A stretch of 64,000 nucleotides of DNA from Haliotis rufescens. Lineage: Eukaryota. The notes beneath the pieces are model-generated. The model saw only the letters and a program-made list of their open reading frames with translations, searched no databases and had not been told where the DNA came from. This document shows positions 1 to 51,009 of the stretch, piece by piece. A program made the translations under genes and the position numbers. Each line of letters opens with the position of its first letter. The first letter of the stretch is position 1. Location: positions 59,210,001 through 59,274,000 of the forward strand of contig NW_025963890.1 in assembly GCF_023055435.1 (NCBI RefSeq), read 5' to 3'.

Positions 1-117
1 GTCGATGTGTCAAAGCATAATGGTTAACTCATCCGCTCGTGGTATAATGTTTAATTACAAGGTGATCTCATGACCATTTCAGTTCAGCGTTCCCTTATGG
101 CGATTCCATTACATCGT

Positions 118-2410
118 ATGTTGTTGTATACAAGTCTAGGTAGGGTGTATACCATCAGGGCTAGATGATGTTGTGTACAAGTCTAGGTAGGGTGTATGCC
201 ATCAGTGCTACATGTTGGTGTATACATGTCTAGGTAGGGTGTTTGCCATCAGGGCTACATGTTGTTGTATACAAGTCTAGGTAGGGTGTACATCATCAGT
301 GTTACATGTTGTTGTGTACAGGTCTCGGTTGGGTGTATACCATCAGTGCTACATGTTGTTGTATACAAGTCTAGGTAGGGTGTACACCATCGGGGCTACA
401 TGATGTTGTGTACAAGTCTAGGTAGGGTGTATGCCATCAGTGCTACATGTTGGTGTATACATGTCTAGGTAGGGTGTACACCTTCAGTGTTACATGTTGT
501 TGAATACAAGTCTAGGTAGGGTGTACACCATCAGTGTTACTGTTGTTGTATACAAGTCTAGGTAGTGTGTACACCATCAGTGTTACATGTTGTTGTATAC
601 AAGTCTAGGTAGGGTGTATGCCATCAGGGCTACATGTTGTTGTTTACAAGTCTAGGTAGGATGTATACCATCTGTGCTACATGTAGTTGTATATACGTCT
701 AGGTAGGGTGTATACCATCAGTGCTACATGTTGTTGTAAACAGGCCTCGGTTGGGTGTACACCATCAGTGCTACAAGTTGTTGTATACAAGTCTAGGTAG
801 GGTGTATGCCATCAGGACTACATGTTGTATACAAGTCCAGGTAGGGTGTATATCAGGGCTACATGTTGTTGTATACAAGTCTAGGTAGGGTGTATACCAT
901 CAGTGCGACATGTTGCTGTATATAAGTCTAGGTAGGGTGTATATCATCAGTGCTACATGTTGTTGTATAGAAGTCTAGGTAGGGTTTATGCCATCAGGGC
1001 TACATGTTGTTGTATACAAGTCTAGGTAGGGTGTTTGACATCAGGAGTGCATGTTGCTGTACACAAGTCTAGGTAAGGTGTATATCATAGCTACATGATG
1101 TTGTATACAAGTCTAGGTAGGGTGTATATCAGGGCTACATGTTGTTGTATACAAGTCTAGGTAGGGTGCATGCCTTCAGAGCTACATGTTGTTGTATACA
1201 GGTCTAGGTAGTGTGTATACCATCAGGGTTACACGATGTTGTATACAAGTCTTGGTTGGGTGTACACCATCAGTGCTACATGTTGTTGTATACAAGTCGA
1301 GGTAGGGTGTATGCCATCAGTGCTACATGTTGTTGTGTACAGGTCTCGGTTGGGTGTATACCATCAGTGCTACATGTTGTTGTATACAAATCTAGGTAGG
1401 GTGTACACCATCAGTGTTACATGTTGTTGTATACAAGTCTAGGTAGGGTGTACACCATCAATGTTACATGTTGTTGTATACAAGTCTAGGTAGGGTGTAT
1501 GCCATCAGGGCTACATGTTGTTGTTTACAAGTCTAGGTAGGATGTATACCATATGTGCTACATGTAGTTGTATATAAGTCTAGGTAGGGTGTTTACCATC
1601 AGTGCTACATGTTGTTGTAAACAGGCCTCGGTTGGGTGTACACCATCAGTGCTACAAGTTGTTGTATACAAGTCTAGGTAGGGTGTATGCCATCAGGACT
1701 ACATGTTGTATACAAGTCCAGGTAGGGTGTATATCAGGGCTACATGTTGTTTCATACAAGTCTAGGTAGGGTGTATACCATCAGGGCTTCATGTTGTTGT
1801 ATACAAGTCTAGGTAGGGTGTATACCATCAGTGCGACATGTTGCTGTATATAAGTCTAGGTAGGGGGTATACCATCAGTGCTACATGTTGTTGTATAGAA
1901 GTCTTGGTAGGGTTTATGCCATCAGGGCTACATGTTGTATACAAGTCTAGGTAGGGTGTTTGCCATCAGGAGTGCATGTTGCTGTACACAAGTCTAGGTA
2001 AGGTGTATATCATAGCTACATGATGTTGTATACAAGTCTAGGTAGGGTGTATATCAGGGCTACATGTTGTTGTATACAAGTCTAGGTAGGGTGCATGCCT
2101 TCAGAGCTACATGTTGTTGTATACAGGTCTAGGTAGTGTGTATACCATCAGGGTTACACGATGCTGTATACAAGTCTGGGTAGGGAGTATACCATCAGTG
2201 GTACATGTTGTTGTATACAAGTCGAGGTAGGGTGTTTGCCATCAGAGCTACATGTAGTTGTATACAAGTCTAGGTAGGGTGTATACCATCAGTGCTACAT
2301 GTCGTTGTATACAAGTCTAGGTAGGGTGTACACCATCAGTGCTACCTTTTGTTGTATACAAGTCTAGGAAGGGTGTACACCATCAGAGCTACATGTTGTT
2401 GTATATATAT
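118..2410. repeat. 47-bp tandem satellite, about 48 copies (consensus TGTTGTTGTATACAAGTCTAGGTAGGGTGTATACCATCAGTGCTACA)
   Basis: CAAGTCTAGG recurs with 47-nt period (e.g. 131, 178); ORFs 1211-1442 are repeat translations. Confidence 0.95.
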
Positions 2411-4859
2411 ACGTTGTCTCCGCACGGTGTATCTCATCAAGGTAATACATTGTTTATGCGTATCTAGGTCATCAAGGTAACATGAAGTTGTCTTTGTCGA
2501 CTCGTGTTGTGGAATGCAAGTTCTTGGGTCTTGAGACAATTCATATAAAACAAAATCGAACACATTATCGATCATAATACACTTAATGTTTATGTTGACG
2601 TCCATTTATGAACAAACATCGCCCTGGTCAAGAGCAAAAGTGCTTTTAGTTCTATACGTATTTTTTAACGAAAAGCCAAATCACTTGTATATAAATTCAA
2701 TATTTTTCTTCTTATCAAAGTTTTGTCCATGTCACCGTTACAGTAGAACATATTCGTGAGCCTTCTGCGCAGGATCGGACCCTGCTTGTGCCTGACGTTT
2801 TTCGTCATTTTTGTTTTATCTGTAAATTATATGATAAAACAAATGTTCCATCAACACTCAGTCGGATTTAACTGACTTTTTAGAGGAATCATTGCACACC
2901 AACAGTGAGATGTACAATTTAAGACCAACATGGCTTTTGTTAATATTGAAGAATCACCGCGTTGACAATGGGCGTTTAAAGAAAATGAGAAGATATACAC
3001 ACATTGAGGAAAATATACTCGTTATAGTTATGCGCTGGGGTTTAATTTGGTTTCCAGTGTGTAGAAATGTGTCCAGTGGGGTTCCATATCAAGAGCATGG
3101 CGTGTTTCACGAGACGTCCGTGCTCGACATGTCCATCTACAGATTCCATTGTTTTAAGGGTTGTGATTTTTCAAAAGGATAGCCCATGTATTCTCTCTCA
3201 GTTGATTGATACTGAATACCCATAAGGCCGCGGGCACGGGCTTGTTGGCTTAATTGGTGTAAATGGGCCAGTGTATAACACGGATACTTCCCATGTTGCA
3301 TCACGGTTGTCGTTCATCGCTTCGTTCTCATCGCTACATTTACTCGCTTTCCATCATGTTGAACGTTCTGCGGAGTTTTGTACAGCCTTCAGCCCAGGCG
3401 CCTCCGTCTCGACAGGCCACTCCAGAAGCAACTTCTCAGGTCCAACAGGACACTACTCCGGCATCCTCCAGGGTAACATCATCATCGTCGTCAACGCCTT
3501 TTGCCATCCGAATGGTGACCACGCCCTTCTTCACACCATCCAAGAGTAGGCAGGCAGCTGGGGCACGGCATCGGGGGCGACTCCAGTGGATGTAAGTAAA
3601 CACATTAACTTCATAGAGTTCATCCTCTTCAACCAACGTCTCGATACCCGTTCTACTTGACATGCTTACTGCGTATGTCATTGATGCAGTCGTTCATGTC
3701 TGAATCTATGTATTTTTGTTACGCTTCTGAGTGAGCGGATTCCAGCAATATCACGGCGGGGAAGGATCTAACCTAAGTCGTTTTGCGTGTCCGGCGAACA
3801 CTTTACTCGTTACGCTACCCCAGCGTTCCAAAGTCTGTGATTCAGTTTTCTTGTACCGTCATTGGTATGGTGTATGACATCAGGGCTACTGGGCAATATT
3901 TTGTTACGGTCACCATGTGTTATCCTATATATTGATTTGGTTTAACTCTTTGTTTTTGTAGCAATATACACATGACCATGTCCTATCCAGTTATTGTTTC
4001 ATTTGCTTGTAAAATGTACCAACACATACACCAAAACGACGCGTTGAAAGTGAAATGAAAGTTTGATGTACTGTCATAGCACGGGTTTTTCTACAGTTCT
4101 GGTCATGAACACAACTATGACAGCTGTATCAACAACAACACCATGGCATAAACCGTCCCTTGATTGTTTCATTGTTAGCCACCACCACGCATGGTTGTCA
4201 CTCTCCTTTCCCCGGCAGTATGTGTAAGTTCATTGTTTTGGCAATATTTGACATTTGTTTATGTTTGACAGGTTTCTGAATCCGCGGAATTGTTGAAACT
4301 CCGAGAGGAAAACCGGAAATTACAAGAGGATATCGGGGAACTAAAAGAAGAAAACCGGCCTCTGAAAGGAAATGTTAGTCAACCACAATGAATATGTTTA
4401 GGTTTAACGCCGCCTTCATCAGTCCTTTATGTTTGTGATTGCGTGGCACCACGATGTTGGAGGTGGACCCAAAGTGTCACAGGCCGTGGAGGCGTATCCT
4501 GCCTGCACCAGGATGGAACGGCGTCTTAAACTGCAAGACTATTACTGTAGCTATCAGATGTTCAAATGTATCCGTTCTCGGAACTTCAACACAGGACATT
4601 GATGAGATAACAAGATCGAATAGATCTATATTTAAAACGACTGATTTGTATATGCATAAAAAATTCCAATATAATACTACTCAAAAGAAGTAAAAGAACA
4701 TCCGACTCATATGTCCACAGATAATCTGTCATGCCATGACTTTGGTGTTCTTGCACTTCTTATATGTAGTCAGGAGATGATCGTTTGAGAAAGTCGAAAG
4801 TGAGACGTTAGATGGTGTGACGTCGCATGCACGATTATTTCAGTCATTTGTTTTATATT

Positions 4860-12865: not shown

Positions 12866-15251
12866 AGCTATCACTATATTTCATCAACAACCAGACCTGT
12901 TGGTCACGGGTGGAACGAGCATTCATTGTAACAGCCATCTGCATAATGCTTCCCCTGCGTCACAGGGCCATATGACACAGATGAATCAACTCAACTCGAA
13001 AGGTTGCATTGGAATCACGCACGCACGAATACGGTGTTAGCATTAGATTTCATGTCTCAGCGCAAACATCTTTCTGCTGATGCGAAAGGTTTCGTTGTTA
13101 AAATATTTGAATACTTTAGGTTGAAAGTGAAAGACGTTCGCCCTTCTTTGACATTTCAAAGTACAGGAAAAGAACAATTCATGCGTTACAGCTTTCCAAA
13201 CAAACCGTAGTTAAGATTTTGAACTCTCATAAAAACACATGCTTCCCTGCACATCCCTTAAGTGGCATATCAAAACAGGATAGGAAATTAAAGTTAGATT
13301 CCTTTGATAAGAAAGTTGTCAGGGACGTGATCGGCGGTTAACACGAGAAAATGAATTTATTTCATCACGAAAACTAAAACAAATTCTCCTTACAGAGCAT
13401 GGCTTAGATAGCTCAAAATGGACCATTTGTAAACTCCTTTCCAAATTTGGATATCAGTACAAAAAGACGAAAGGGTCGAAACTAGCAATGTGTGAACGAC
13501 CAGATATCATTCGTTTGCGTATCAATTATTTGCGCACTATTAAAAAGAAACGAGAAGAAGGCTATGAGCCTGTCTATTTGGACGAATCCTGGGTTAACGC
13601 CTGTCACACAGCGGCTTACCAATGGTCTCACCCAGATACCAGAGAGCCACAGCGCAAGATCCCCCCTGGTAAAGGGGAGCGCCTGATTGTCCTCCATGCA
13701 GGCTCCCACAGAGGTTTCTTCCCTAGGTGTGATCTAGTGTTCAGATCCAGATCTACAGATGGCAGAGACTACCATACCGAGATGAATAGTCAGGTTTTCA
13801 CTGCGTATGTTGAGGAGCAGCTCCTCTTAGCACTGCCTGATAAATCCTTGGTGGTTATGGTCAATGCTCCCTATTACAGTTGTCGAGATCCCATTAACAG
13901 TTGTCCAACCTCAAATTCCACCAAAGGTGAGATATGTCGGTGGTTGGACAACAACCGCATTGCTCGGCCCACAAAAGCAAAACAAACTGACTACTACCAA
14001 CCGGTTCTTCAGAACAAACCCCCGCCCTCTTATTTGATAGGACAACATGTTGAGAGAACACGGTCACGAAGTGCTTAGACTTCCTCCTTACCTTTGTGAC
14101 TTGAATCCAATCGAACTAATCTGGGGTGATTTGAAAAAATATTGTCGCACGGCAAAATAAGACCTTCAAGCTTGCCGACGTCAAGCAGATTGTCTTGAAA
14201 GGGATGGGAAAAATTCAGATGTACATGGGGCAAACTGTGTCCAACATGTTATCAAAGTTGAGGAAGAGTATTGGAAACAAGACTGTATCCGACCACATAC
14301 TGTCCAGCCTGTTGTTGTTTATTTAGGTGACAGCAAAGACTCCGAATCTGATGACGAGGGCATTTCGTGGGACCAAGAATAATGCAATACATATACCCCT
14401 GTTTCACTGCGAGATGCAATAGCCCGAATTACCAAGGATATGAATTCTTACAGATTCGTACATATTCTTAATTACTTCTTAAGAATCTTAAATATATCTT
14501 ATTTGAATCGATAACATTCTTGTAATACGTGGGATTCGTGAAAAAAATTGTTTATCAAAGAATTCCTAGGAATCGTCTACGAATTTCAGGTTCGTGCTTT
14601 GTAGTACATGTCGTTATCGGATCTTGTCCACTTTGTGCAATTCATGGCTCTGAATTTGATTCTCTTTCACCCGAAACAGCCCCGAAAGTCTCGAATCATC
14701 TACGAAAATATTAAAATATTTTCTTCGAAACCATAAAGCAATGATTTGACTAAATGAATAATTACGTATGATATGTTACACCTAATAACATGATGCATGA
14801 AATATAATAATGTGGCAAGGAGTGATACATTCAAGTCAATAACACTGACCTGAAAAAGAATGCAAAAATATTTGGATAAATATTATTAAATAACTGCTTG
14901 AGACGCCCAACGCTAACACCGTATTCGTGCGTGCGTGATTCCAATGCAACCTTTTGAGTTGAGTTGATTGGTTCAACTGTGTCATATGGCCCTGTGACGC
15001 AGGGGAAGCATAATGCAGATGGCTGTTACAATGAATGCTCGTTCCACCCGTGACGAACAGGTCTGGTTGATGAAATATAGTGATAGCTAAATAGTCTGGT
15101 TTATTATTCATGCACCGATTGTCATTAAATGAAATATCCAGTTATGTATGACTGTTTAATAATCTCATACCAACTTTGACTGGAGTAGGTCCAATAGTTT
15201 TTCAGATATTGTAGTAAACGTCGGTACCTTAAATTAACTTCCAGACTTATA
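12866..15251 (+). mobile_element. Decayed IS630-Tc1-mariner DNA transposon, Sailor-like (~DD83E), with ~175-bp inverted repeats
   Basis: Inverted repeats 12866-13041 and 14912-15088; possible right terminus ...TTAACTTCCAGACT followed by TATA at 15248-15251; internal transposase remnant. Confidence 0.8.
13052..14382 (+). pseudogene. DDE transposase pseudogene (Sailor-like)
   Basis: Motifs VYLDESWVN, GKGERLIVLHAG, DYHTEMN, VVM[V]NAPYYS (second catalytic D replaced by V), GHEVLRLPPYLCDLNPIELIW; 253 nt from the D2 position to E (about 83-aa spacer with one frameshift); several stops and frameshifts. Confidence 0.88.
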
Positions 15252-15459
15252 CGCTCGGTGACTGTTGATTGCATGTCATCGTACACCAACGGCCTGGATC
15301 GTTGCTCATTATAATTATCAATTTTTGGATTTTCCGGTCCATACTCGAGTATTTATTATTTATTCCCGCGCTACAAACTAAAAAAAGGCAATCACCTGGA
15401 AACAAACACTGCACAATGGACAGTAAACCCTCTTCATAATAAGGCGGGGCTTCTAAAAG

Positions 15460-15556
15460 AGTGAGTTAGTGAGTATGGTTTTACGCCGCTTTTAGCAATA
15501 TTCCAGAAATATCACGGCGGGGGACACCAGAAATTGGCTTCACACTTTGTACCCAT
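15460..15556 (-). mobile_element. tRNA-derived SINE family B, 5'-truncated
   Basis: Reverse complement of the 3' half of the 30740-30912 element, with (GAGT)n tail. Confidence 0.8.
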
Positions 15557-15928: not shown

Positions 15929-15949
15929 TGACGTCAATGCTTCGCGGAA
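15929..15949. promoter_or_regulatory. Orphan CRE + STAT/GAS-like composite element
   Basis: TGACGTCA-ATGC-TTCGCGGAA in sequence homologous to the copy-1 upstream region (21260 onward), but no vWA gene follows. Confidence 0.6.
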
Positions 15950-17239
15950 CGCTTTACTCACACAGCAAACAATCGATAATCTTCTCAATAACAACACATA
16001 GGAATCTTGTAGATGTTTCTGTGGAATATATAATGTGAAATGATAGTGTGTATGTACTGTACTGGAATGCATCGTGCCTTCCTGTTGATTATCCTTTGAT
16101 TTTGTAAACCATTATGATCAAACAAAGTGTGTGAATACACATTGCTGTGTTCCATCTGGGGAAATCTTTGTCGTATCAAACATTCCCTAAGAAGCGTTCC
16201 TGCATTGTATTTTCCAGAATATATGGCGGCCCTAAAGGAATTCGCTATTTTGCAAAAAAACATATATTGGTATCATAACAATGAACACTTTCACTGAGAT
16301 ATAATTCGATAAGAAGGCGTTTTTAACTACTTTGTTCACGGATTCGCAGACCATTTTTTAATACCCGTTAAACAACATGATGTTTGTGTCTTTGGCAATT
16401 TATTTCAGGAATAGAACAAGTTGTTTTAAAAATCAATATAGGAAGTGATGTAAATTTTTGTAAAATCAAGAGCCACTTTGCGTATTTTTTCTATTTCTAC
16501 GAGACTGATAATACTTTTCAGAAAGCTCTTGTATAGAACAATTTTTCCTTACATCTAATATATATTTACGTTTATTTTCAGCAACGAGAAAATGTTTTAA
16601 AATATATCAATAAACCAAGTTATTTAAAATAACAACATTGATCAAGATTGGCCAGTTTCCTTGATATATACATCTGGAAAATAATTAAAGTATTACCTGT
16701 TTTATATTTTCATATATCCTTAACTTCCATTCATCTTTTGGAAATATCTACACATGACATTGATCTTATTTCATTTGAATGTTTAAGAAAACACCGATGC
16801 CTGCTATGCAGTGAGTTCACGAAAACGCCATATCGTAAGATGCAAAGAAGCTGATGCAGCTATTGAATGGGAAGTCAAATAGTTATTTTCACACAATCGT
16901 TACAAAACATGCAATTAGATTATCGATTTCAGTTTCTGTATTTCAGTATGGGTCTGTCGCGTTGTAGAAAATAAAGGGGTTGCGTACGAACTTTAATACC
17001 GGATGGGATTTTGAAACATGGCTCTTCTATATGGAAATATAGTAAGCAGTGTTTTCCATGATATATGTCAGAAACAAACTATTGCCCCGTTTCATAACAT
17101 TAATCTAAGCATGAACATTTGCTGGTCTTTTAAAAGTTATAAAACGTATGATTAATAATAGTTATGTTGATTATACATCTTCCGACATGGAAAGGTGATT
17201 GTTAATTCAGGAAAAGCGTTCACCACTTGTGGAAAGTAT

Positions 17240-17365
17240 CTCTCAAACACGTTGTTTACCTTCGTGTCTCCTCACACGCGAGTCTAGGACTCGGTTTCAT
17301 TGAGTAGCGCAGTGTAGTGAAGCGAGTTTAGAAAGAATGTGTGACGTATTTACTTCGCGGATTGT
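17240..17365. promoter_or_regulatory. Conserved distal upstream module (orphan copy)
   Basis: CTCCTCACACG..CTAGGACTCGG...GAATGTGTGACGTATTTACTTCGCGGA; homologues at ~22735, ~29027, ~41750, ~49975. Confidence 0.55.
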
Positions 17366-18400: not shown

Positions 18401-20292
18401 CTATACTTTGTCTGATGAAATTGTGCTGCCTTGTTTGAACACATGTCGAGCAGTAGATCGTGATCTCCTCAGACGTCTCCATGCGTAGTCATAGGACTTT
18501 ATCATGGAGGCTGTTTTGACGTGGTATGATGCTCTTCTGTACACCACCCTCCGCATATAGACACTGCAGTCCTGAGACACAACATTGTTCACCTGAGCTC
18601 TGACAAGTTTGTTTCCAAGAAGCCGTGTTTCCCAATTAACATTTTCGGGAATATAGTGGCAGAACTTGCTGAAAACCACACACCTTCGTCCGTACCGGAT
18701 GGACTGAACACCGATCTCATAGAGAGCTGGCTTATTGTTCTCAGACTTGAAGACTGTCTTCTTTCTGAATCCAGGGTTGGTACCCCGTCTTTTCTCCCAT
18801 TGTGCATCCTGTTTGAGTGGGACGTCAGGGGAGATAACTTTGACCCACGGTGACCAGTCCATGTTTCTCAAGCTGAAGTTGTTCTCAAAGACTTCCTCTC
18901 TTCTCAGAAGAGGTGTCACAAACTTTGTTGATTTCTGGAATAATATAGTGTATTATGAGACTCCTTGACATGATCATAGCTTAACACAATGAAAACAAGA
19001 ATTAAACAGTGTCATCGCGCATTTAAAAACAATTGAGAGAATATTTTACCTTGAACGATTTCTTTCTTGGCTTTCTGATGGATTTAGGTTTGGGCTTTCT
19101 GACTCTTTGAATGGATGTTATTTTCTTTAAGGTGGGAACCTTCACATCTTTCTTAGCGGCACTGATTGTAATCGTTGTCTTTGGTGGAGAAGGGGAGACA
19201 ATTCCATCACGTAGGGATGTAAACATTCCTTCCATGTCTTTGCTGAGGGCACCATCAGCGCAACGGGCTCGAACCTCTTTCTCGTACACCTGATGAGGGC
19301 AAATAATCATTGATGAAAGGAGTTTTATAACAACGAATATCACACGATTAAAATGACAGGCTCTCTACGGATTTTAAAGTGGTGCAGTGATTTCAACTTA
19401 CATGAAGAATCTCTGCCCCCTGTTCCCTGTAGCAGATGGCCATAAGGAAGTCAAAGATGTTTGTAAAGTTTTCCAATTTAAGATGCCGACCTCCTGTCTT
19501 GTTGGAAATGGTTTCGTAGAACGTCGTATTGTCCGTGTCGCACTGAACTCCATAGATTTTCACTCCCTGAAATTAATATTAATATATAGAATAAGTGAAT
19601 AAACATCGTTGTGTCGAATTTACGATTGTTGTCGTGAAGTAAAAGCAAGGTCCCTGCACCTTTCTTATTTATTCATCATTTTCGGTTATGTCGAAGCCCA
19701 GATAACTTTACTCGGATAAATTTACGTAAGCCCCTTAAACGTCGACACAAAGGTGTTTGACCGTGGTGAGTGTTGTATTCTTATCATTTGATATATGTAT
19801 GAAAATGACCACAACCTGGAAATTAATAGAAATTCAACATACCATTTCATCCAGAGTTTGTGTCTCCTTTCTCCAGTCTATTTTTAGTTTATTGGCTTTG
19901 AAATCTGGTTCGTGGGGCTTGTCGTCCCCGACGACGACGAGAACACGGTTAGATCCTGGTGTCCATGACAACTCCTCCCTAACTTGTCGGAGAACAAGCT
20001 CGTAACACTCGCCGTGGTCGTATGTGCCTCCTGTATCTTTAACGTTCATGACGAAGTCGCAGAGTTCTTTGACGTCAGTGGAGAAGTCGATCCACTTTGT
20101 GACATATGTGGATTTGGTACAGTAGTCACCGTGTGCGAAGACGGCGATTCTGACGGCGGGGATGTCAGCCTGGAGCCGCTGTATCATGTCCTGGAGTCGT
20201 CCTCTGACTTCAGCCAGACACTTGCTCATGGAGCCGGTTGTGTCAAAGGAGAAGACAATCTCCGGAAGTCCACCAGGAGGAAGCAAAGCCAT
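18401..20292 (-). CDS. vWA(MIDAS) + basic linker + ET/HRT-type GIY-YIG-like protein, copy 1 (462 aa); CDS exons 20292-19843, 19566-19402, 19289-19050, 18934-18401
   Basis: Four coding exons (450, 165, 240, 534 nt) joined by GT-AG phase-0 introns give one open frame. N-term IVFSFDTTGSM...AHGDY...TGG...ECYE...VVGDDKPH; C-term WSPW...PALYEIGV...SVYMRR...YDYAW. Candidate AATAAA at 17995-18000. Confidence 0.92.
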
Positions 20293-20726
20293 ATTGAATC
20301 TGTTGAAATATTCAAAACAACTGAAGTACATGTATACAAGAAGTTTCACTCTAAAAATTGATAGAAATTTAGAACAATTAACTCTAGCAGTGTAAATAAT
20401 TAAAAAATGTTTTGAAAATCCGATTTTTTTCCTTTTTAATCTTAATTTTTATATTCTCAAAATTTCATAAAAGAATAGATTAACTTTTTAACAAGTCCAT
20501 TAAGAAACAAGAATGTTTCTTAAAAATATTTGCACTGGTAATTTCCGTTATTATGCTATGATCATTTTTTATAGATATAAAAGAATGTGTTTCCATTATT
20601 AGTAAATATTTTTTCTTATCAAATAGATATAAATAGATAAGTTATTTGGCGACGATTTCCTCGATGTTATCAGAGGCGGTACTATATGTATATACACCAT
20701 CACTGTTAACATGTTCCTCTAGTTAC

Positions 20727-20870
20727 CCGTTTTGAATGGTGAGAGTAGTTATATAGTTCTTGTGCTATATTTCCACGCTGCTGTCAGACGTAGTTTATAT
20801 CTATTCAAGTCTTTCAACTGTAGTGTATGCCAGTAGACTGATCTTACTCAGCAGCCCGCCAGCTTTTATA
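20727..20870 (-). promoter_or_regulatory. Copy 1 core promoter and non-coding exon 1
   Basis: TATAAAAG (20870-20863); Inr TCAGTC with A+1 at 20839 (TATA at -31); donor G|GTAACT at 20727/20726; acceptor CAG just before 20299. Confidence 0.8.
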
Positions 20871-21259
20871 CTGGCTGAGAGGCGACCAATGGGAGCTCGC
20901 TGAGACTTGTCTTGGCTGGCATGTTTGGACCTGTTCCGTGGTTGTGTTTAGACGAGCAGGCGATGTTCATGTCTATGCGTTTCAGTAGATGCCTCTGTTT
21001 GGAAAGAAACAAAATCAACTGCTTAATCAGTTGACGATAAATGTAATCGGGGAAATATTAAACATTTTAGACTTAGGGAAACGTGTTGTCATTGAATGTC
21101 TCATGTTCTGAATCGACGCGTGAAACATACATCCAGAAAAGCATGAACATACTCTCACAAATACATTGTTTATATCTATGCTCTTTACACTGTCTGTCGG
21201 AAGATATTTCGGTCGGAATCGGTATATACCCGCAATGTACAGAGTTTGTATATTGTAGA

Positions 21260-21280
21260 TGACGTCATTGCTTCCTTGAA
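21260..21280. promoter_or_regulatory. CRE + STAT/GAS-like element, copy 1
   Basis: TGACGTCA-TTGC-TTCCTTGAA (TTC-N3-GAA), about 420 bp upstream of the predicted TSS. Confidence 0.65.
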
Positions 21281-22734
21281 TGCTTTACTCGCACAACAAA
21301 CAATGGATTATATTCTCAGTAACTACACATAGGAATCTTGTTGATGTTTCTGAGGAATATACATTGTGAATTGACAGTGTGTATGTATGGTACTGGAAAA
21401 TATCTCCCCTTCCAGTTGATTGTCCTTTGATTGTGTAAACCATTATGATCAAACAAAAGGTGTGAATATACATTGTTGTGTTCCATTTGGAGCATACTTT
21501 GTCGTATCAAACTTTCCCTCAGAAGCGTTCTTTTGTTTTATTTTTGAGAATATATGTCGGCCCTAAACGAATTCGCTATTTTGCAAAAAAACATATATTG
21601 GTATCATAACAATGAACACTTTCTCTGAGATATAATTCGATAAGAGTGAGTAAGTTGTATTTAACGCCGCTTTTAACAGTATTCCAGTTATATCACGGCG
21701 TGTCAGCTTAATGTGGGAGGAAAGCCCGAAGTGATTCAGGTCTCAATTCGATAAGAAGGCATTTTTAATTACTTTGTTCACGGATTCACGGACCATTTTT
21801 TAATACACGTGAAACAACATGATGTTGGTGTCTTTGGCAGTTTATTTCAGGAATAGAAAAAGTTGTTTTAAAATTCATTATAGGAAGTGATGTAAATTTT
21901 TGTAAAATCAAGAGCTACTTTCGTATTTTTTCTATTTCACGATACTTTTCAGAAAGCTCTTGTATACAATTTTTCCTTACATGTAATATATATTTACGTT
22001 TATTTTCAGCAACGAGAATACGTTTTAAAAATATATATCAATAAACCAATTTATTTAAAATAACAACATTGATCAGTTTTCATGACATACATAAATAATA
22101 CTCTTGTGACCGGATTTGATATGAAGTATCAGCTGTACTACCGTGGCCAGTTTCCTTGATATATACATCTGGAAAATAATTTAAGTATTACCTGTTTTAT
22201 ATTTTCATATATCCTTAACTTCCATTCATCTTTTGGAAATATCTACACATGACATTGATCTTATTTTTTTTGAATGTTTAAGAAAACACCGATGCCTGCT
22301 ATGCAGTGAGTTCACGAAAACGCCATATCGTAAGATGCAATGAAGCTGATGCAGCTATTGAATGGGAAGTCAAATAGTTATTTCCACACAACCGTTACAA
22401 AACATGCAATTAGATTATCGATTTCAGTTTCTGTATTTCAGTATGGGTCTGTCGCTTTGTAGAATATAAAGGGGTTGCGTACGAACATTAATACCGGATG
22501 CGATTTTGAAACATGGCTCTTCTATATGGAAATATAGTAAGCAGTGTTTTCCATGATATATGTCAGAAACAAACTATTGCCCCGTTTCATAACATTAATC
22601 TAAGCATGAACATTTTCTAGGCCTTTTAAAAGTTATAAAACGTATGATTAATAATAATTATGTTAATTATACATCTTCCGACATGGAAAGGTGATTGTTA
22701 ATTCAGGAAAAGCGTTCACAACTTGAGGAACATA

Positions 22735-22860
22735 TTTCTCAAACACGTTGTTTACCTTCGTTTCTCCTCACACGCGAGTCTAGGACTCGGTTCATTGAGT
22801 AGCGCAGTGTAGTGAAGCGAGTTTAGAAAGAATGTGTGACGTATTTACTTCGCGGATTGT
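22735..22860. promoter_or_regulatory. Conserved distal upstream module, copy 1
   Basis: Near-identical to 17240-17365; ends TGACGTATTTACTTCGCGGAT. Confidence 0.55.
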
Positions 22861-26576: not shown

Positions 26577-26728
26577 CTTTTTTGAATGATGACAGTAGAT
26601 ATTTAGTTGTTGTTTGTTATTTCCCCGGTGCTATTAAATGCCGTTTTAGATATACCAACGCTTTCCAACTGCTAGCGAGTGACTTGTGTGTAGACTGATC
26701 TTACTCAGCGAGCCGGTCAGCTTTTATA
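26577..26728 (-). promoter_or_regulatory. Copy 2 core promoter and non-coding exon 1
   Basis: TATAAAAG 26728-26721, Inr TCAGTC (A+1 26696), donor G|GTAACT at 26577. Confidence 0.8.
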
Positions 26729-27096: not shown

Positions 27097-27117
27097 TGAC
27101 GTCACTCCTTCGCGGAA
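27097..27117. promoter_or_regulatory. CRE + STAT/GAS-like element, copy 2
   Basis: TGACGTCA-CTCC-TTCGCGGAA, about 400 bp upstream of the TSS. Confidence 0.65.
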
Positions 27118-29026: not shown

Positions 29027-29150
29027 TCTCTCAAACACATTGTTTACGTTTCTTTCTCCTCACACGTTCATCTAGGACTCGGTTTCATTGAGAAGCGTAG
29101 GGCAATGTAGCAAGTTGAAAAGGAATGTGTGACGTATTTACTTCGCGGAT
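29027..29150. promoter_or_regulatory. Conserved distal upstream module, copy 2
   Basis: Retains CTCCTCACACG, CTAGGACTCGGTTTCATTGAG and GAATGTGTGACGTATTTACTTCGCGGAT amid diverged flanks. Confidence 0.55.
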
Positions 29151-30739: not shown

Positions 30740-30912
30740 GGGGCGGTCGGGTAGCCTAGTGGTTAAAGCGTTCGCTCGTCACGCCGAAGACCCGGGTTCG
30801 ATTCCCGACATGGGTGCAATGTGTGAAGCCCATTTCTGGTGTCCCCCGCCGTGATATTGCTGGAATATTGCTAAAAGCGGCGTAAAACCTCACTCACTCA
30901 CTCACTCACTCA
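30740..30912 (+). mobile_element. Full-length tRNA-derived SINE family B in the 3' flank/UTR of copy 3
   Basis: A box TAGCCTAGTGG, B box GGTTCGATTCCC, (CACT)n tail, target-site duplication TCAGTCACGCA; empty site visible in copies 1 and 2 (~18163, ~24096). Confidence 0.92.
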
Positions 30913-33986: not shown

Positions 33987-34134
33987 CTGTTTTTCTTTGA
34001 TTAGTGACGGTAGTTCGTGAACTATGGTCATTCGCTGCTGTGAGATATGGTTTATGCAATAAAGTCTCTCAACTGCAGCTGCGTATGCTATGTGTGCTGA
34101 ATGATCTTACTGGGCGAGCCCGCTAGCTTTTATA
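33987..34134 (-). promoter_or_regulatory. Copy 3 core promoter and non-coding exon 1
   Basis: TATAAAAG 34134-34127, Inr TCATTC (A+1 34102), donor CAG|GTAATC at 33987. Confidence 0.78.
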
Positions 34135-40353: not shown

Positions 40354-40434
40354 CTTTTATATTGATATGTTGTACACACAGGGTAGTTTATGTCAGCTGA
40401 CTGATCTTACTCAGCGAGTACCTTAGCTTTTATA
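40354..40434 (-). promoter_or_regulatory. Copy 4 core promoter and short non-coding exon 1
   Basis: TATAAAAG 40434-40427, Inr TCAGTC (A+1 40402), donor AAG|GTAATT at 40354. Confidence 0.78.
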
Positions 40435-40834: not shown

Positions 40835-40855
40835 TGAGGTCATTTCTTCGCGGAA
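40835..40855. promoter_or_regulatory. CRE-like + STAT/GAS-like element, copy 4
   Basis: TGAGGTCA-TTTC-TTCGCGGAA, about 430 bp upstream of the TSS. Confidence 0.6.
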
Positions 40856-41749: not shown

Positions 41750-41870
41750 TATCTCTCAAACACTCTTTGTTTACATTAAGTTCCCCACGCGTGTGTATAG
41801 GACTCGGTATCGCAGTGCAGTGTGACAAGTTTGGCAAGAATGTGTGACGTAATTACTTCGCGGAATGTGA
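41750..41870. promoter_or_regulatory. Conserved distal upstream module, copy 4
   Basis: TAGGACTCGG...GAATGTGTGACGTAATTACTTCGCGGAA. Confidence 0.55.
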
Positions 41871-42687: not shown

Positions 42688-43102
42688 CTGGACATTAGTA
42701 GGCGTAATATGCTTGATGAACGTGTTAATTTTATTATGCGTGTTCATTTTCACAAATACACATGGATAATATTGCCAACGTGGATGTGAATATTGTGGAA
42801 AGGCTGATAATAAGAAAGCTTCCTCGATATCATTTATTCAGTATGTTTGTTCATTTTCAAGTAGTAAATGTACTGTGATATAGCAGTTTGACACTTGCGC
42901 CCGTGCAACAAGCGGGGCTGCTTTTACATGAAGATGCCATCTCCGTGTGGAAATACACGATCGCTAAGAGGGTTTATTGTTTACAAGTTCTCCGGTCTAT
43001 ATACAAGAATTGTTATACATGCATATCTACAACTGTATGCACACATGTGTCAATTCGGGGTCAATTTTTCTCTCTCAATGTAATTAATCACACACAAAGT
43101 AT

Positions 43103-43876
43103 ATACGTAAATGTATGTGACAATGAAGAAATAGATGTGTGGACACACACAGCAAATATCACAAACGTGAAGATAGATGACAATGAAGATTTAGGTGTCT
43201 GGACACACACAGCAAATACCACACACGTGAAGATAGATGACAATGAAGATTTAGGTGTCTGGACACACACAGCAAATATCATACACGTGAAGATAGATGA
43301 CAATGAAGATTTAGATGTGTGGACACACACAGCAAATATCACAAACGTGAAGATAGATGACAATGAAGAAATAAATGTGTGGACACACACAGCAAATATC
43401 ACAAACGTGAAGATAGATGACAATGAAGATTTAGATGTCTGGACACACACAGCAAATATCACAAACGTGAAGATAGATGACAATGAAGATTTAGGTGTCT
43501 GGACACACACAGCAAATATCATACACGTGAAGATAGATGACAATGAAGAAATAGATGTGTGGACACACACAGCAAATATCACAAACGTGAAGATAGATGA
43601 CAATGAAGATTTAGATGTCTGGACACACACAGCAAATATCACAAACGTGAAGATAGATGACAATGAAGATTTAGGTGTCTGGACACACACAGCAAATATC
43701 ATACACGTGAAGATAGATGACAATGAAGAAATAGATGTGTGGACACACACAGCAAATATCACAAACGTGAAGATAGATGACAATGAAGATTTAGATGTCT
43801 GGACACACACAGCAAATAGCATACACGTGAAGATAGGTGACAATGAAGATTTAGATGTCTGGACACACACAGCAAA
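43103..43876. repeat. 60-bp minisatellite, about 13 copies, no indels
   Basis: GGACACACACAGCAAATATCACAAACGTGAAGATAGATGACAATGAAGATTTAGATGTCT in perfect register. Confidence 0.97.
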
Positions 43877-44569
43877 GTTTTTGAAGAAGATTTACTGTTT
43901 ATATCAAAAAGGGCTTTTACGATTCATTTCTATATTCTGTAAAGAGAATCTTTTTGTGGCATTGGGGGCCCAGTCGTCTAAGACGCCACGATTCGCTGTG
44001 CAGAGTTCCGTCCCAGGGCACACCAGACACCTATGATTACTGGTTCGAATCCCGGTTCGCCCCTGTTATGTTTCTAGGTATGTATCTTAAATTAGCGATA
44101 TTATAGCCAAAAAATGAACGGTTAAAGCGCTTAGTCAGCGCTCAATGAATACTTCTACATGGTTTAAAGCTTTAAAAGATTACTTTTTTTGCGCCTAATA
44201 CACAACTGGTGATAGGTTTCTTGGACATTTATTTACAATATTTCACTTGACCCAAGTTTGATTCAAGTCATCACCGGTTTGTTAGTCTGCTAACTTAACT
44301 TTAATGATATATGTATTCATGACATTAGTTTTATTTAAGCTATATCCGTATGCGTTTATCAATATAGTACCAACGGAGTTGTGATGGATCTGTGTGTATG
44401 CGGGAGTGTGTGAGTAATTGGTCAGTATATTTGTATCAATTTTGTTTAGGCATATGGTAGGGTGTTTCAGCGTCGTGTTGTTTTTATATCTATATCAGGC
44501 CTGCCTATGAAAAAAAGTCGAATTAGGGATTCCGACTAAATTATGAGCATGTATTTATTAATCATGTTC

Positions 44570-45834: not shown

Positions 45835-48197
45835 TTATATTTCCTCTGACGACATTATGCTGCCTTGTCTGTACACATATCGGGCGCGAGGGCGTGATCT
45901 CAGACGCTCCCAAGCATAGTCAAAGGACTTCATCATAGAAAGAGACTTATTGTGACTTGAAGCTCTTCTGTACACCACCCTCCACACAAAGACACTTTCC
46001 CAAGTAACATTCCCGGGGATATGGTGTCAAACGTGTTGAATACTACGACCCTTCGTCTGTATCGTTTGGCTTGAACAGCTATTTCATAGAGAGCTAGTTT
46101 ATTGTTCTCAGAAATGAACATCCGTGTTTCTTTAGCAAAAGATGTTCTCAAAGACTTGCTGGAGTATCATGCAGGAAGACGAGGCACCATAGGTCTCCAT
46201 GATCCCCAGCAGGCTTGAACAGGTTTTTCATAGAGAGCTAGTTTATTGTTCTCAGAAATGACATCCGTGTTTCTTTAGCAAAAGATGTTCTGAAAGACTT
46301 GCTGGGGTATCATGCAGGAAGACGAGGTACCATAGGTTTCTATGATCCCCAGCAGGCTTGAACAGCTATTTCATAGAGAGCTGTTTTATTGTTCTCAGAA
46401 ATGAACATCCGTGTTTCTTTAGCAAAAGATGTTCTGAAAGACTTGCTGGGGTATCATGCAGGAAGACGAGGTACCATAGGTTTCTATGATCCCCAGCAGG
46501 CTTGAACAGCTATTTCATAGAGAGCTGTTTTATTGTTCTCAGAAATGAACATCCGTGTTTCTTTAGCAAAAGATGTTCTGAAAGACTTGCTGGAGTATCA
46601 TGCAGGAAGACGAAGTACTGTAGGTCCCCATGATCCCCAGCAGGTGGCCTAGCTTTGGTTACTTGTGGCCTACAACCCGTGTTTTAAACTGTATTAATGT
46701 TATTGTTATGTTAGTTTGATCAAATGTGTTTTAAAACAAAATATACATTTGCATTCATAACTCAATTGTGAATACGTATATTAACTTGGTCTCGTCGCTA
46801 TATGGCTGAAATAATGCCGATGCGACGAAAATTTAAACTCACTCACTCAAAGACTTCCGCTCTTCTCAGAAGAGGTGCCACAAACCTTTCTGGTTTCAGG
46901 AATTACAAACATATAACGAGAGTACAGATCTCCCAATGAACACCACACGTGACATTGCGAAAAGATAGCTATTTAATTTATGATTTATGAAACTTCCCTT
47001 CAATGATTTGGTTCTGGGCATCCTGTTTGATCTACGTTTAGACTTTTGGACTCCTCGGTTGGATGCTGTCTTCTTTAAGGTGGGAACCTTCACCCTCATC
47101 TTGGCAGGCTTAGCAACAGCAACATTCTTCCCATCCTTCCCGACTCCAGGAATGGATGTCGTCTTCTTAAAGATAGGTGGCTTATCACCTTTCTCAGCCG
47201 CACTTGCTGGCGTCTTCTTCTTTGGCGAGGAAGGGGAGGCTACTCCATCCAGTAGAGACGTAAACATGACTCGAACCGCTTTTTCGTAATCCTGATAAAT
47301 AAAACAAATCTTACAGACAAGATAAACAAAATATTATTTTTGAAATCAAACATTGGAAATGACAATCCATGGATCAATTAACCCTGGACACATGTATTGA
47401 GATAACAATATAGTGGGTAATCGATAACTCAAATACGACAGGGGAGGCCAGATATGTCAAATTACACGAAGGGTATCTGCCCCGTGTTCCCTGTAGCAGA
47501 TGGCCATGATGAAGTCAAAGATATTTGTATAGTTGTCCAATTTAAGATGTCGTCCTCCTGTCTCGATGCAAATTGTCTGGTAGAACGTCGTAGCCCAGTC
47601 GTCACACTCAACTCCATAAATTGTTATTCCCTGGATATAAAATCAGTGAATATCATGAGTACCTATATCTCTTCATATGATTTATGAAGAGGATTATAAA
47701 ATGTTGCAGCCTTCTAAGTTGATCGAAATTACAGGGTAAAATTCAACTAACCATTTTATGGAGAGTTTTTGTCTCCTCTCCAGTCTATATTTCGTTTATT
47801 GGCTCTGAAGTTTCGTTCGTGGGGGTAGTCGTCTTCGACGACGACAAGACCTCGGTTGGATCTCTGTGTCAAAGACAACTCCTAACAAACCTTGTCTGAA
47901 AACAAGCTCGTAACATTCGGCCCCGTCATCAGTGCCCCCCTGTACCTTTCACGTTCATGACGAAGTCCCAGAGCTTTTTGACGTCAGTGGAGAAGTCGAT
48001 TTTGTGACATATGTGGATTTGGTACAGTATTCACCGTGTGCGAAGACGGCGATTCTGATGGCGGGGATGTCAGCCTGGAGCCGCTGTATCATGTCCTGGA
48101 GCCGACCTCTGACTTCGGTCAGACAGTCGTTCATTGTCCCGGCTGTGTCAAAGGAAAACACAATCTCCATAAGTCCACTAGGAGGGACTAAGGCCAT
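45835..48197 (-). pseudogene. vWA + GIY-YIG-like gene, copy 5 (pseudogene)
   Basis: ATG at 48197; MIDAS degraded to DTAGTM; 4-nt deletion near 48000 causing a frameshift and stop at 47955; deletions in later exons; last exon split by an insertion (~46158-46845); TATA decayed to TATGAACG (~48470). Confidence 0.9.
46069..46643. repeat. ~144-bp tandem repeat x4 spanning an exon/insertion junction of the pseudogene
   Basis: GCTTGAACAGCTATTTCATAGAGAGCT...CATGATCCCCAGCAG repeated four times. Confidence 0.92.
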
Positions 48198-48909: not shown

Positions 48910-49080
48910 TGAGTGAGTGAGTGAGTATGGTTTTACGCCGCTTTTAGCAATATTCCAGCAATATCACGGCGGGGGAAACCAGAAATGGCCTTCACACATT
49001 GTACCCATGTCGGGAATGGAACCCGGGTCTTCGGCGTGACGAGCGAACGCTTTAACCACTAGGCTACCCGACCGACCCTG
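48910..49080 (-). mobile_element. Full-length tRNA-derived SINE family B
   Basis: Reverse complement of 30740-30912; flanking direct repeats TGCA(A/G)GTATTGA. Confidence 0.9.
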
Positions 49081-49672: not shown

Positions 49673-51009
49673 GGTCCACACTCGAAGTGTTTTGCACAGA
49701 CGTATATATGCTTATTCCCACCATAACGTTTAGAGAATAAATTCTCTTATAAAGTTCTAGTTCTAGTGCGGTCTTTCTGCTTTGTAATCGACTTTGTATT
49801 CATCTCAACTTGTAATGAATCGTTTCTTTGATAAATCAAGAACATCATGATCTAAAGATACCAATATATAACATGATTAAGTAATACTGGGTGTATATTT
49901 GTAGTTGGCCAATCGGCTGCAGGTGACGGAGATGGTTGAAACACAACGAAATCCGTTCATGACTTCTTCAGATAGATCCCTCGAACGTGTCATGGTGTCC
50001 TCACACGGTTCTAGGACTCGGTTTGTTGGTGTAGTGCGGTCGCGAGTTTACCAAGAATGATTAACTTTCTCTCATGTGAGCGGCATTGTCTACCGGTAAA
50101 CTGTCTTATTCTGAACTCACTGCCGTCATTGAACGTAAACGAACTACTTTCATTACCAATGATTCAAGTAGCACCTAATAATAAAAACTAAGAATAACAC
50201 ATTTCACGGAATATTGTCCGGATAAAAGATCGGAAATCGACTAATTATCAAATACTAAAAAGAATGAAATTACCGGTCTTCGGCGCGACGAGCGAACGCT
50301 TTAACCAATAGGCTACCCGACCGCCCCTTTTTTAATGAAGGCTACGGACCAAAAGAGAACCCATTAAAACAATTTACAACAGTCGGAAGCATAATTATTT
50401 TCTTCAAGCATTTCCTGGAACAACTTTTTTTAAAAACATCCCAGCATCCCTACCCACCCCAAATGGTCGGTACCAGAGAACCCCTTTTAACCCTCGCCTG
50501 CATTATAGTTTATTTTACCATCTCTACCTCCATGTGCAAACAGTAACACTGCAACCACAGCATCTTTTGTTTTCACTATCACTATAACTAATGAGGATCA
50601 ACTGTTTACAATGCATGAGAGAGTATGTTTAATTTAACGTCGCTTTGAACAGCATATCTTGGTTCCATGGGAAAAGTATACTTCGGTAGACAATATCAAT
50701 ATTGTTCTCCTGTTCGACCTAGACTATGGTCTGTTCGAACATGGCGTGGTTCACATCGGGTAATAGTGACTTGATTTTATTCTAGTTCACGTGGGTACAT
50801 CAGTGGAAGAAGCGAATTGTCTATTTGACAAGTATTGAACGATAATCGATACACCTGAAGTTTAAGTTAAACTGTTTTCCCCAAATTCCCGTGTTTTCAT
50901 TTTGCCAATCCGAGCAGAAATTCTCGCTTCATATTTCAAATTTCACATAAATGTTCCCTTTTATTAAGTAATCTTGCGAGAATTATCTAGCGATTTGGCC
51001 TACATCATA

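What the first reader, a model, noticed from the sequence alone, without database searches (positions are those of the whole stretch)
21260..21280. Phylogenetic footprint: CRE next to a STAT/GAS site at -400 to -430 in every intact copy
TGACGTCA lies 3-4 nt from TTC-N3-GAA at 15929, 21260, 27097, 34502 and 40835 (TGAGGTCA variant). In copy 1 the three central bases differ (TTCCTTGAA versus TTCGCGGAA) while both half-sites persist, as expected under selection for STAT binding. No such element is found upstream of the pseudogene. This suggests joint JAK-STAT and CREB/ATF control, like an interferon-stimulated gene. An E2F-like reading of TTCGCGG is the alternative.
Basis: partly seen in the sequence, partly recalled or inferred. 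Interest (0 to 1): 0.75.

Follow-up and report, generated by a model that had tools for sequence, protein, structure and literature searches.

The report
Conserved upstream motif pair, abalone genes
A short two-part DNA motif sits about 420 bases upstream of every intact copy of a tandemly repeated, uncharacterised abalone-type gene and has been kept while the surrounding DNA drifted, so it is very likely a real regulatory switch, but which proteins bind it is not established.

Summary
TGACGTCA (one TGAGGTCA variant) lies 3-4 nt from TTC-N3-GAA at exactly the five listed places.

The genes are on the minus strand. They encode a vWA plus GIY-YIG-like protein. There are four intact copies and one pseudogene in the window, and seven more copies 130-165 kb away.

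All 11 intact copies carry the pair, about 405-455 nt upstream of an inferred TATA/Inr start site (about 300 nt in one copy). Among five old paralogue lineages, the pair is the strongest non-coding conservation island in 1.6 kb. 15-18 of its 21 columns are invariant, against a mean of 1.6 elsewhere. An alignment-free test finds only the TATA box and ATTCCGCGAAG shared by all lineages.

So a paralogue footprint is real.

The STAT/CREB/interferon-like reading is untested and weakened:
- The CGC spacer is as conserved as the half-sites.
- A second, independently conserved copy of the module in each unit mostly reads TTCGCGGAT, which breaks the STAT palindrome.
- The 15929 copy is an orphan with no gene.

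I read it as a family-private bipartite enhancer: a bZIP site plus a TTCGCGGA-reading factor. STAT is one candidate for the second factor. Interest is modest.

The parts
21260..21280 (-). Module M1 of gene copy W1: CRE TGACGTCA (21260-21267), spacer, TTCCTTGAA (21272-21280). The three central bases differ from all other copies.
27097..27117 (-). Module M1 of copy W2: TGACGTCA + TTCGCGGAA
34502..34521 (-). Module M1 of copy W3: TGACGTCA + TTCGCGGAA, spacer one base shorter
40835..40855 (-). Module M1 of copy W4: TGAGGTCA variant + TTCGCGGAA
15929..15949 (.). Orphan M1 copy with no gene. Homology to the W1 unit starts exactly at the CRE; the left flank is a duplicate of sequence about 600 nt to the right.
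   Evidence: (D13)
22837..22857 (-). Module M2 (distal duplicate) upstream of W1: TGACGTATTTACTTCGCGGAT
17342..17362 (.). Module M2 in the orphan unit
29130..29150 (-). Module M2 upstream of W2
41845..41865 (-). Module M2 upstream of W4: TGACGTAATTACTTCGCGGAA. The only M2 that keeps TTC-N3-GAA.
21145..21207 (-). Second conserved block of the W1 promoter (gene sense CAGTGTAAAGAGC...ATAAACAATGT...TTTGTGAGAG). It is collinear with a block about 100 nt from M2.
20863..20870 (-). TATA box of W1 (TATAAAAG). Equivalents: W2 26721-26728, W3 34127-34134, W4 40427-40434.
20836..20843 (-). Inr-like GATCAGTC of W1, with the inferred start site at 20839. Equivalents: W2 26693-26700, W3 34099-34106, W4 40399-40406.
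   Evidence: inferred; not covered by RNA contigs
20727..20839 (-). Predicted non-coding exon 1 of W1, ending at a conserved GGTAAC donor
   Evidence: inferred
18401..20301 (-). Gene copy W1, coding exons 19842-20301 (ATG at 20292), 19400-19565, 19050-19287, 18401-18934. Encodes a vWA domain plus a C-terminal GIY-YIG-like domain.
   Evidence: (three CT..AC joints)
47771..48197 (-). First coding exon of the pseudogene (2 TGA and 1 TAG inside). No module upstream.

Best explanation
The pair is a selectively maintained, family-private bipartite cis-regulatory module for a tandemly expanded gastropod gene family (vWA domain plus GIY-YIG-like C-terminal domain).

In gene sense it reads ATTCCGCGAAG - 3-4 nt - TGACGTCAT. 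It lies about 420 nt upstream of a canonical TATA (TATAAAAGC) plus Inr (TCAGTC) core promoter. That promoter drives a roughly 110-nt non-coding exon spliced to the ATG exon.

Proposed mechanism. A bZIP dimer of the CREB/ATF class sits on the full or half CRE. A second factor reads the adjacent CGCG-centred element, whose core CTTCGCGGA is common to all copies. The fixed 3-4 nt spacing lets the two act together on the downstream promoter. An ancient internal duplicate of the module (M2, 1-3 kb further upstream) serves as a second, shadow element.

STAT is the leading named candidate for the second factor (about 1 in 4). It is not established, and an E2F-like or unknown factor is as likely.

Shown: the motif positions, the gene structure of the coding exons, excess conservation, genome-wide uniqueness, and the second module.

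Inferred: the start site, that the conservation reflects protein binding, the identity of the factors, and any inducibility.
For: (1) Presence. All 11 of 11 intact array copies carry the pair, at -653 to -1002 from the ATG.

(2) Excess conservation.
- On an 11-sequence alignment of 1.6 kb upstream, the 21-column module needs 11 parsimony steps, against a mean of 41.6 (sd 10.7). Only 3 of 1852 windows score that low, and all three overlap the module.
- With one representative of each of five lineages, 15-18 of 21 columns are invariant, against a mean of 1.6. The 12 best windows all overlap the module.
- The most diverged copy, L043, matches the others at 17-21 of 21 module positions. In the flanking 150 columns it matches at only 29-43 of 130-148 (left) and 53-86 of 148-149 (right).

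(3) Alignment-free test. The only exact words of 8 or more bases shared by all five lineages in 1.6 kb are the TATA box and, with L044 standing for its lineage, ATTCCGCGAAG. Shuffles give a mean of 0.00-0.02.

(4) Uniqueness.
- TGASGTCA-N2-5-TTCGCGGAA has 12 genome hits, 9 of them in these arrays, with 0 in reversed controls.
- TGACGT-N4-5-CTTCGCGGA has 16 hits, 16 of 16 in these arrays, with 0 in controls.

(5) A paralogue on another contig (L050, 64% protein identity) has TTCCGCGAAGC 12 nt upstream of its TATA box. That 9-mer occurs only 3462 times in 1.33 Gb, so the chance of finding one in 1 kb is about 0.001-0.003.

(6) M2 is itself the top conservation island among its 5 aligned copies: 26 of 27 columns invariant, against 20% overall. 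It is collinear with M1 over about 140 nt.

(7) The pseudogene lacks the module.

(8) The family is transcribed and spliced as modelled in 4 of 4 runs laid.

(9) A one-base indel in W3's spacer and the lack of any conserved ORF argue against coding. Rfam finds nothing.

(10) STAT_bind and pKID domains are encoded in the genome.
Against: - All comparisons are between paralogues of one genome. There are only about five independent lineages and no orthologues from other species.
- Arrays undergo gene conversion. A tract limited to about 25 nt in five lineages is unlikely but is not excluded.
- MAFFT misplaced the TATA box of L043, so the alignment-based flank conservation is underestimated for that copy.
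- The match of L050 to the module is not above shuffled controls in an unconstrained local alignment (scores 23-27, against shuffle maxima of 30-36).
- The orphan at 15929 keeps a perfect module without a gene. That fits recent duplication, not selection.
- The start site was not seen in RNA: there was no contig coverage of 20302-21500. The distance to the promoter is therefore inferred.
- No binding, chromatin or induction data exist.
- Three lineages carry changes inside the elements: the W1 spacer, the W4 CRE, and the L046/L047 CRE.
Confidence: 0.7

Rival explanations
1. One reading: a GAS element bound by a STAT dimer next to a CRE bound by CREB/ATF, giving joint JAK-STAT and cAMP/stress control, like an interferon-stimulated gene.
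For: - TTC-N3-GAA is present in 11 of 11 M1 copies.
- W1 changed all three spacer bases yet kept both half-sites.
- The genome encodes a STAT DNA-binding domain and a pKID.
- Invertebrate STAT92E uses TTCnnnGAA, and conserved sites marked real enhancers in Drosophila (PMC2877871, passages read).
- Tandemly expanded lineage-specific families are often defence genes (general knowledge).
Against: - The spacer CGC is invariant in 10 of 11 M1 copies, both orphans and L050. So the constraint covers more than the half-sites.
- 5 of 6 M2 copies read TTCGCGGAT although M2 is strongly conserved.
- The W1 argument rests on one event, with a chance probability of about 1 in 7.
- TTCnnnGAA is a low-information word: 38 occur in this window, and 85 occur in one fly locus, of which 20 are conserved.
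- There is no expression or induction evidence. The family is annotated only as uncharacterised.
Confidence: 0.25
2. The CGCG-centred element is read by an E2F-like or other, unidentified factor (for example a lineage-specific zinc-finger, or a single protein reading the whole roughly 25-nt block), paired with an ATF-type bZIP. The TTC-N3-GAA palindrome is incidental.
For: - The core common to M1, M2 and L050 is CTTCGCGGA, with the CGCG invariant in 18 of 19 copies listed.
- M2 lacks the palindrome but is conserved.
- In L050 the element lies about 50 nt from the inferred start site, a typical E2F position (positional habit recalled).
- An ATF site beside E2F sites is the classical layout of the adenovirus E2 early promoter (recalled, not from a call).
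Against: - CTTCGCGG matches the recalled E2F consensus TTTSSCGC at only 6 of 8 positions.
- W1, an intact gene, has lost the CGCG entirely.
- The spacer between the two elements varies (GCAG, GGAG, GTAG, GAAA, GCA-), which speaks against a single long recognition site.
Confidence: 0.3
3. The module is (or was) the proximal part of a core promoter: an upstream alternative start site next to M1, as in paralogue L050, where the same element abuts the TATA box.
For: - L050 reads TTCCGCGAAGC TCTGAGGTC C TATATAAAG.
- In the arrays an A/T-rich ATATACAAAC follows the CRE.
- A conserved GTAAGG lies about 75 nt downstream.
- CREs usually act close to start sites (recalled).
Against: - The A/T-rich stretch after the CRE is not a conserved TATA box across lineages.
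- A perfect TATAAAAGC plus TCAGTC plus conserved donor lies 400 nt downstream in all lineages.
- No RNA contig covers the module's surroundings. The laid contigs did not cover the predicted exon 1 either, so this is uninformative.
Confidence: 0.1
4. No function: the pair persists only through shared descent and concerted evolution of a young tandem array.
For: - The orphan copy at 15929 keeps the module without a gene.
- Several copies are 94-98% identical overall.
- Arrays are prone to gene conversion.
Against: - Between lineages the non-coding identity is 50-70%, yet the module is near-perfect.
- The only other word shared by all five lineages is the TATA box.
- The same 9-mer recurs in an unlinked paralogue.
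- M2 shows the same island pattern independently.
Confidence: 0.08

Closest known systems
cAMP response element (CRE, TGACGTCA) bound by CREB/ATF bZIP dimers
   Same: The full 8-bp palindrome is present in 8 of 11 gene-linked M1 copies and in the orphan. The half-site CGTCA is kept in 10 of 11 M1 copies and in 6 of 6 M2 copies.
   Different: It lies about 400-450 nt from the inferred start site, further than the usual proximal position (recalled). Three gene copies carry one-base variants (W4, L046, L047). No binding was shown.
GAS / STAT site (TTC-N3-GAA), including Drosophila STAT92E 3n sites (PMC2877871, passages read)
   Same: The palindromic half-sites with a 3-nt spacer are present in all 11 M1 copies. 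As in that paper, conservation is used as the pointer to function.
   Different: The spacer is as conserved as the half-sites. The duplicated module M2 breaks the palindrome in 5 of 6 copies. No cytokine or JAK-STAT link to this gene family is known.
E2F site next to an ATF site (layout of the adenovirus E2 early promoter; recalled from memory, not from a call)
   Same: A CGCG-core element sits directly beside an ATF/CRE-type site. In L050 it is within about 50 nt of the start site.
   Different: Only 6 of 8 positions fit the recalled E2F consensus. In the arrays it lies about 420 nt upstream. W1 lacks the CGCG.
Shadow or duplicated enhancers in tandem gene arrays
   Same: There are two homologous modules per unit (M1 and M2), each a conservation island.
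   Different: No activity data. M2 was found by exact pattern in only 6 units.

Membership tests
CRE (CREB/ATF site) | 8-bp palindrome TGACGTCA, or at least the half-site CGTCA | tested here: met
   The full palindrome is present in 8 of 11 gene-linked M1 copies and in the orphan. The half-site is present in 10 of 11 M1 copies and 6 of 6 M2 copies.
CRE (CREB/ATF site) | Occupancy by a CREB/ATF protein and a response to cAMP or stress signalling | not testable with these tools
   The genome encodes a pKID domain. That shows only that a CREB-type factor exists.
GAS / STAT-binding element | Palindrome TTC-N3-GAA | tested here: met
   Present in 11 of 11 M1 copies, but in only 1 of 6 M2 copies.
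GAS / STAT-binding element | Constraint on the half-sites with a freer spacer | tested here: inconclusive
   The spacer changed only in W1, and the chance of sparing both half-sites is 1 in 7. CGC is invariant in the other 10 M1 copies, the orphans and L050.
GAS / STAT-binding element | A STAT protein in the organism, STAT occupancy, and JAK-STAT-dependent induction | not testable with these tools
   One STAT_bind locus is found (C334, 43 and 29.3 bits, both over the cut-off). Occupancy and induction could not be tested.
E2F site | Match to TTTSSCGC (consensus recalled) | tested here: not met
   CTTCGCGG fits 6 of 8 positions. W1 fits none of the core (read directly).
Phylogenetic footprint (element under purifying selection) | Conservation significantly above that of flanking non-coding DNA among independent lineages | tested here: met
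   Met among five paralogue lineages and for M2. Not tested among species, because no other Haliotis genome could be reached.
Interferon-stimulated-gene-like locus | Induction by virus, dsRNA or cytokine | not tested
   No such data are in the runs laid or in the papers found. Supplementary tables were closed.

The most novel reading that the evidence does not exclude
The two arrays form a lineage-specific inducible defence battery. A dozen vWA plus GIY-YIG-nuclease-like genes are each wired through a private, duplicated bipartite enhancer. In the form TGACGT-N4-5-CTTCGCGGA it occurs nowhere else in 1.33 Gb. It integrates a STAT-type and a CREB/ATF-type signal, making this a gastropod analogue of an interferon-stimulated gene cluster whose cis-code can be read directly from the paralogue footprint.
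Probability: 0.12. Interest if true: 0.6.

Novelty: new member of a known kind. Interest (0 to 1): 0.35.

Why it matters
Almost nothing is known about cis-regulation in gastropods. This case offers a short, sharply delimited element that is as conserved as the TATA box and is unique to one expanded gene family.

It gives a ready-made test object: a 21-nt probe for EMSA or DAP-seq, and a small promoter for reporter assays. It also gives a handle on what controls an uncharacterised vWA plus nuclease-like family.

If a STAT or CREB link were shown, it would bear on the debated interferon-like response of molluscs. If not, it still defines a new motif-factor pair to look for.

Tried and rejected
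(1) Distant paralogues on C135 and C390 (L051-L053) carry TTCTCTGAAGCA. It looked like a third instance with a free spacer, but it lies inside a long coding N-terminal extension. Rejected.

(2) Unconstrained local alignment of the L050 upstream kilobase to the array promoters gave scores of 23-27, no better than shuffles (mean about 24, maxima 30-36). Only the directed 9-mer test is significant.

(3) RNA evidence for the start site. The contigs of four likely-RNA runs confirmed the three coding introns and the exon start at 20301. They gave no coverage of 20302-21500, and they differ from W1 at many sites, so they come from other copies or alleles. The start site stays inferred.

(4) Rfam on 20200-22200: 0 matches at E up to 1.

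(5) An exact 21-mer in metagenome contigs, looking for other abalone DNA: 0 matches.

(6) CpG decay as an extra argument for constraint: the upstream regions have CpG o/e of 0.80-1.09, so there is no hypermutability to argue from.

(7) The three strict-pattern hits outside the arrays (L031, L032, L042) have no family gene within the 1.5 kb fetched on either side. L032 and L042 share a different double-CRE context, one of them beside a retroelement-like ORF. About one hit is expected by chance by my own estimate. Not pursued.

(8) Literature. Searches for the 9-mers, GIY-YIG/vWA/mollusc, abalone STAT/JAK/poly I, Haliotis vWA transcriptome infection and oyster STAT-site promoter luciferase found nothing on this family or its promoter. 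Only listings were seen, except passages of PMC11103948 and PMC2877871.

(9) A SOCS-promoter comparison to learn the abalone STAT site preference was considered and not run, because the start sites are unknown and the result would be ambiguous.

(10) The joined (spliced) protein was never built or searched. Exon translations were searched apart.

Full report
WHAT IS THERE.

The window is G000:C112:59210001-59274000 of a 1.33-Gb genome. It holds a tandem array with a 5.9-8.1 kb period.

The genes run on the minus strand. ORFs and Pfam show a vWA domain in the first coding exon. Contigs of four likely-RNA runs confirm three introns with CT..AC ends (18935-19049, 19288-19399, 19566-19841) and an exon boundary at 20301, 9 nt before the ATG at 20292.

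The translated last exon finds 153 representatives at E up to 0.001 among 1.84 billion. Of the eight looked up, the six that carry a name are uncharacterised or vWA-domain proteins of gastropods: three Haliotis species, Lymnaea, Lottia, Littorina and Batillaria. One H. rufescens entry lies on a contig with exactly the length of C112.

In two of the eight homologues scanned, the C-terminal part hits PF19239, a GIY-YIG-type domain. The spliced protein was not joined or searched as a whole; the exons were searched apart.

A whole-genome search with the first coding exon gives the following:
- 11 intact array copies: four in the window (W1-W4, ATG at 20292, 26222, 33612, 40189) and seven at C112:59044996-59088049.
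- One pseudogene in the window, with 2 TGA and 1 TAG.
- More distant paralogues on C556 (64% identity), C135 and C390 (54-55%), and a fragment on C1.

THE OBSERVATION.

TGACGTCA occurs 12 times, against 1.33 expected. TTCNNNGAA occurs 38 times, against 19.9. W4 has TGAGGTCA, and W1 has TTCCTTGAA instead of TTCGCGGAA.

In gene sense the consensus is ATTCCGCGAAG-CAG-TGACGTCAT.

A TATAAAAGC box is followed at the canonical distance by TCAGTC. About 110 nt further on lies a conserved AG|GTAAC donor, and there is an acceptor 9 nt before the ATG. These are present in the copies.

Measured from that Inr, the pair lies at about -405 to -455 in ten copies and about -290 to -300 in the most diverged copy, L043.

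- The place at 15929 has no gene. There is no vWA exon within 1.5 kb and no family hit left of W1. Homology to the W1 unit begins exactly at the CRE, and the left flank is a displaced duplicate.
- The pseudogene indeed has no pair within 3 kb and keeps only a 54-nt piece of the TATA block.

IS IT MORE CONSERVED THAN ITS SURROUNDINGS?

The eleven upstream regions fall into five old lineages: {W1, L044, L046, L047, L048}, {W2, L045, L049}, W3, W4 and L043. Identity between lineages over the aligned region is 50-71%, and that figure includes 460 nt of well-conserved coding sequence.

- Parsimony. On the alignment, the 21 module columns need 11 steps, against a mean of 41.6 (sd 10.7) for non-coding windows. 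Only 3 of 1852 windows score as low, and all of them overlap the module. Within the better-conserved promoter block the mean is 34.8.
- One sequence per lineage. 15-18 of 21 columns are invariant, against a mean of 1.6. The twelve best windows all overlap the module.
- Alignment-free. MAFFT misplaced L043's TATA box, so I also ran a test without alignment. The only exact words of 8 or more bases present in all five lineages are the TATA box and, when L044 represents its lineage, ATTCCGCGAAG. Shuffles give essentially none.

The CRE is slightly less universal: W4 reads TGACCTCA in gene sense, and L046/L047 read TTACGTCA.

UNIQUENESS.

TGASGTCA-N2-5-TTCGCGGAA has 12 hits in the genome, 9 of them in the two arrays, and none for the reversed control.

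The looser pair pattern has 329 hits against 96 for the control. Many of these repeat one identical 22-nt word that recurs on many contigs.

A DEEPER PARALOGUE.

In L050 the same TTCCGCGAAGC lies 12 nt upstream of a TATATAAAG box. That box is followed by a roughly 100-nt exon, a GTAAAT donor, and an acceptor just before the ATG. The adjacent TGAGGTCC is only CRE-like.

The 9-mer occurs 3462 times in 1.33 Gb, so a directed test gives about 0.001-0.003 per kilobase. An unconstrained local alignment is no better than shuffles. I take this as suggestive evidence that the CGCG-centred element is older than the arrays.

A similar-looking word in L051-L053 is inside coding sequence and was rejected.

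A SECOND MODULE.

A TTCGCGGAA at 41857 led to a second, previously unnoticed module, M2. It reads TGACGTATTTACTTCGCGGAT at 17342, 22837 and 29130, and TGACGTAATTACTTCGCGGAA at 41845. Two more copies lie in the other array.

- The pattern TGACGT-N4-5-CTTCGCGGA has 16 genome hits, and 16 of 16 are in these arrays.
- Among five M2 copies whose flanks are 41-45% identical between lineages, 26 of 27 module columns are invariant, against 20% overall.
- M1 and M2 are collinear over about 140 nt, sharing blocks such as CTCAAACAC.TTGTTTA and GAGTTT, so they are ancient duplicates.

What M1, M2 and L050 share is CTTCGCGGA, plus TGACGT in M1 and M2, rather than the TTC-N3-GAA palindrome.

WHAT IT MEANS.

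The island pattern, repeated independently in M1 and M2 and matched only by the TATA box, is best explained by purifying selection on protein-binding sites. A conversion tract of about 25 nt in five lineages, or a mutational cold spot, is much less likely. I therefore read the pair as a family-private bipartite upstream regulatory module.

The bZIP reading of TGACGTCA is the safest part.

For the second half, the evidence for STAT is:
- The palindrome is present in all M1 copies.
- W1 changed the spacer but kept the half-sites.
- A STAT DNA-binding domain is in the genome.
- STAT92E uses such 3n sites (PMC2877871).

The evidence against STAT is:
- The spacer is otherwise invariant.
- M2 is strongly conserved yet non-palindromic.
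- The W1 event has a 1-in-7 chance.

The E2F-like reading fits the CGCG constraint and the position in L050, but matches the recalled consensus at only 6 of 8 positions and fails in W1.

The interferon-like part of the interpretation has no support beyond analogy. The family is uncharacterised, and none of my six paper searches found it. Supplementary tables were closed.

VERDICT.

It is a real conserved cis-element of a known general kind, with unproven factor identity. Interest is modest: it is useful as a clean test object in a clade with almost no promoter biology, but not surprising in kind.

Noticed in passing
window 21644-21745 (similar pieces at 15459-15556, 30810-30907, 48911-49008, 51009-51101; also L050 about 3120-3190): A SINE-like repeat. 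In four likely-RNA runs the summed contig depth here is 100,000-340,000, with hundreds of loose ends, so it is embedded in very many transcripts. Rfam finds no tRNA or other family in 20200-22200.
   Followed up: partly
window 18401-18934 and homologues P0003, P0013: The C-terminal domain of the array protein belongs to a gastropod-wide family (153 representatives). In two homologues it hits PF19239 (GIY-YIG-type domain). A vWA plus nuclease-like architecture has no described function.
   Followed up: partly
window 25-2000 and beyond: A long satellite with a 47-nt period (37 or more register copies) and strong GC skew (0.28).
   Followed up: no
window 42981-44000: A 60-nt tandem repeat (13 register copies, 90-95% alike) that is open on both strands (ORFs of 382 aa and 260 aa). 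It sits between W4 and the pseudogene.
   Followed up: no
window 54185-54892 (minus strand): An ORF with a fibrinogen C-terminal domain (Pfam E 2.1e-40), i.e. a fibrinogen-related protein gene next to the array.
   Followed up: no
window 13488-14078 (plus strand): An ORF with a weak DDE_3 transposase match (E 0.0019, below the cut-off), left of the orphan module. It may relate to the truncation of the array's left end.
   Followed up: no
window 55943-56346: Two perfectly identical tandem copies of a 202-nt unit.
   Followed up: no
L032 (C57:35744410) and L042 (C556:46026213): Two unlinked places share an approximately 45-nt block with two CREs in tandem followed by TTTTCGCGGAAG. L032 lies beside an RNase-H/retroelement-like ORF. 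This may be a repeat-borne copy of a similar motif grammar.
   Followed up: partly
window 20070, 26000, 33390, 39967, 47979: A second TGACGTCA in every copy lies inside the first coding exon (codons for ...STDVKE...). It is conserved because it is coding, and it explains 5 of the 12 CRE hits in the window.
   Followed up: yes
window 22144-22443 versus 16649-16948: A 300-nt intergenic stretch is 98% identical between two units whose neighbouring stretches are 84-91% alike. This points to local gene conversion or an unrecognised element.
   Followed up: no
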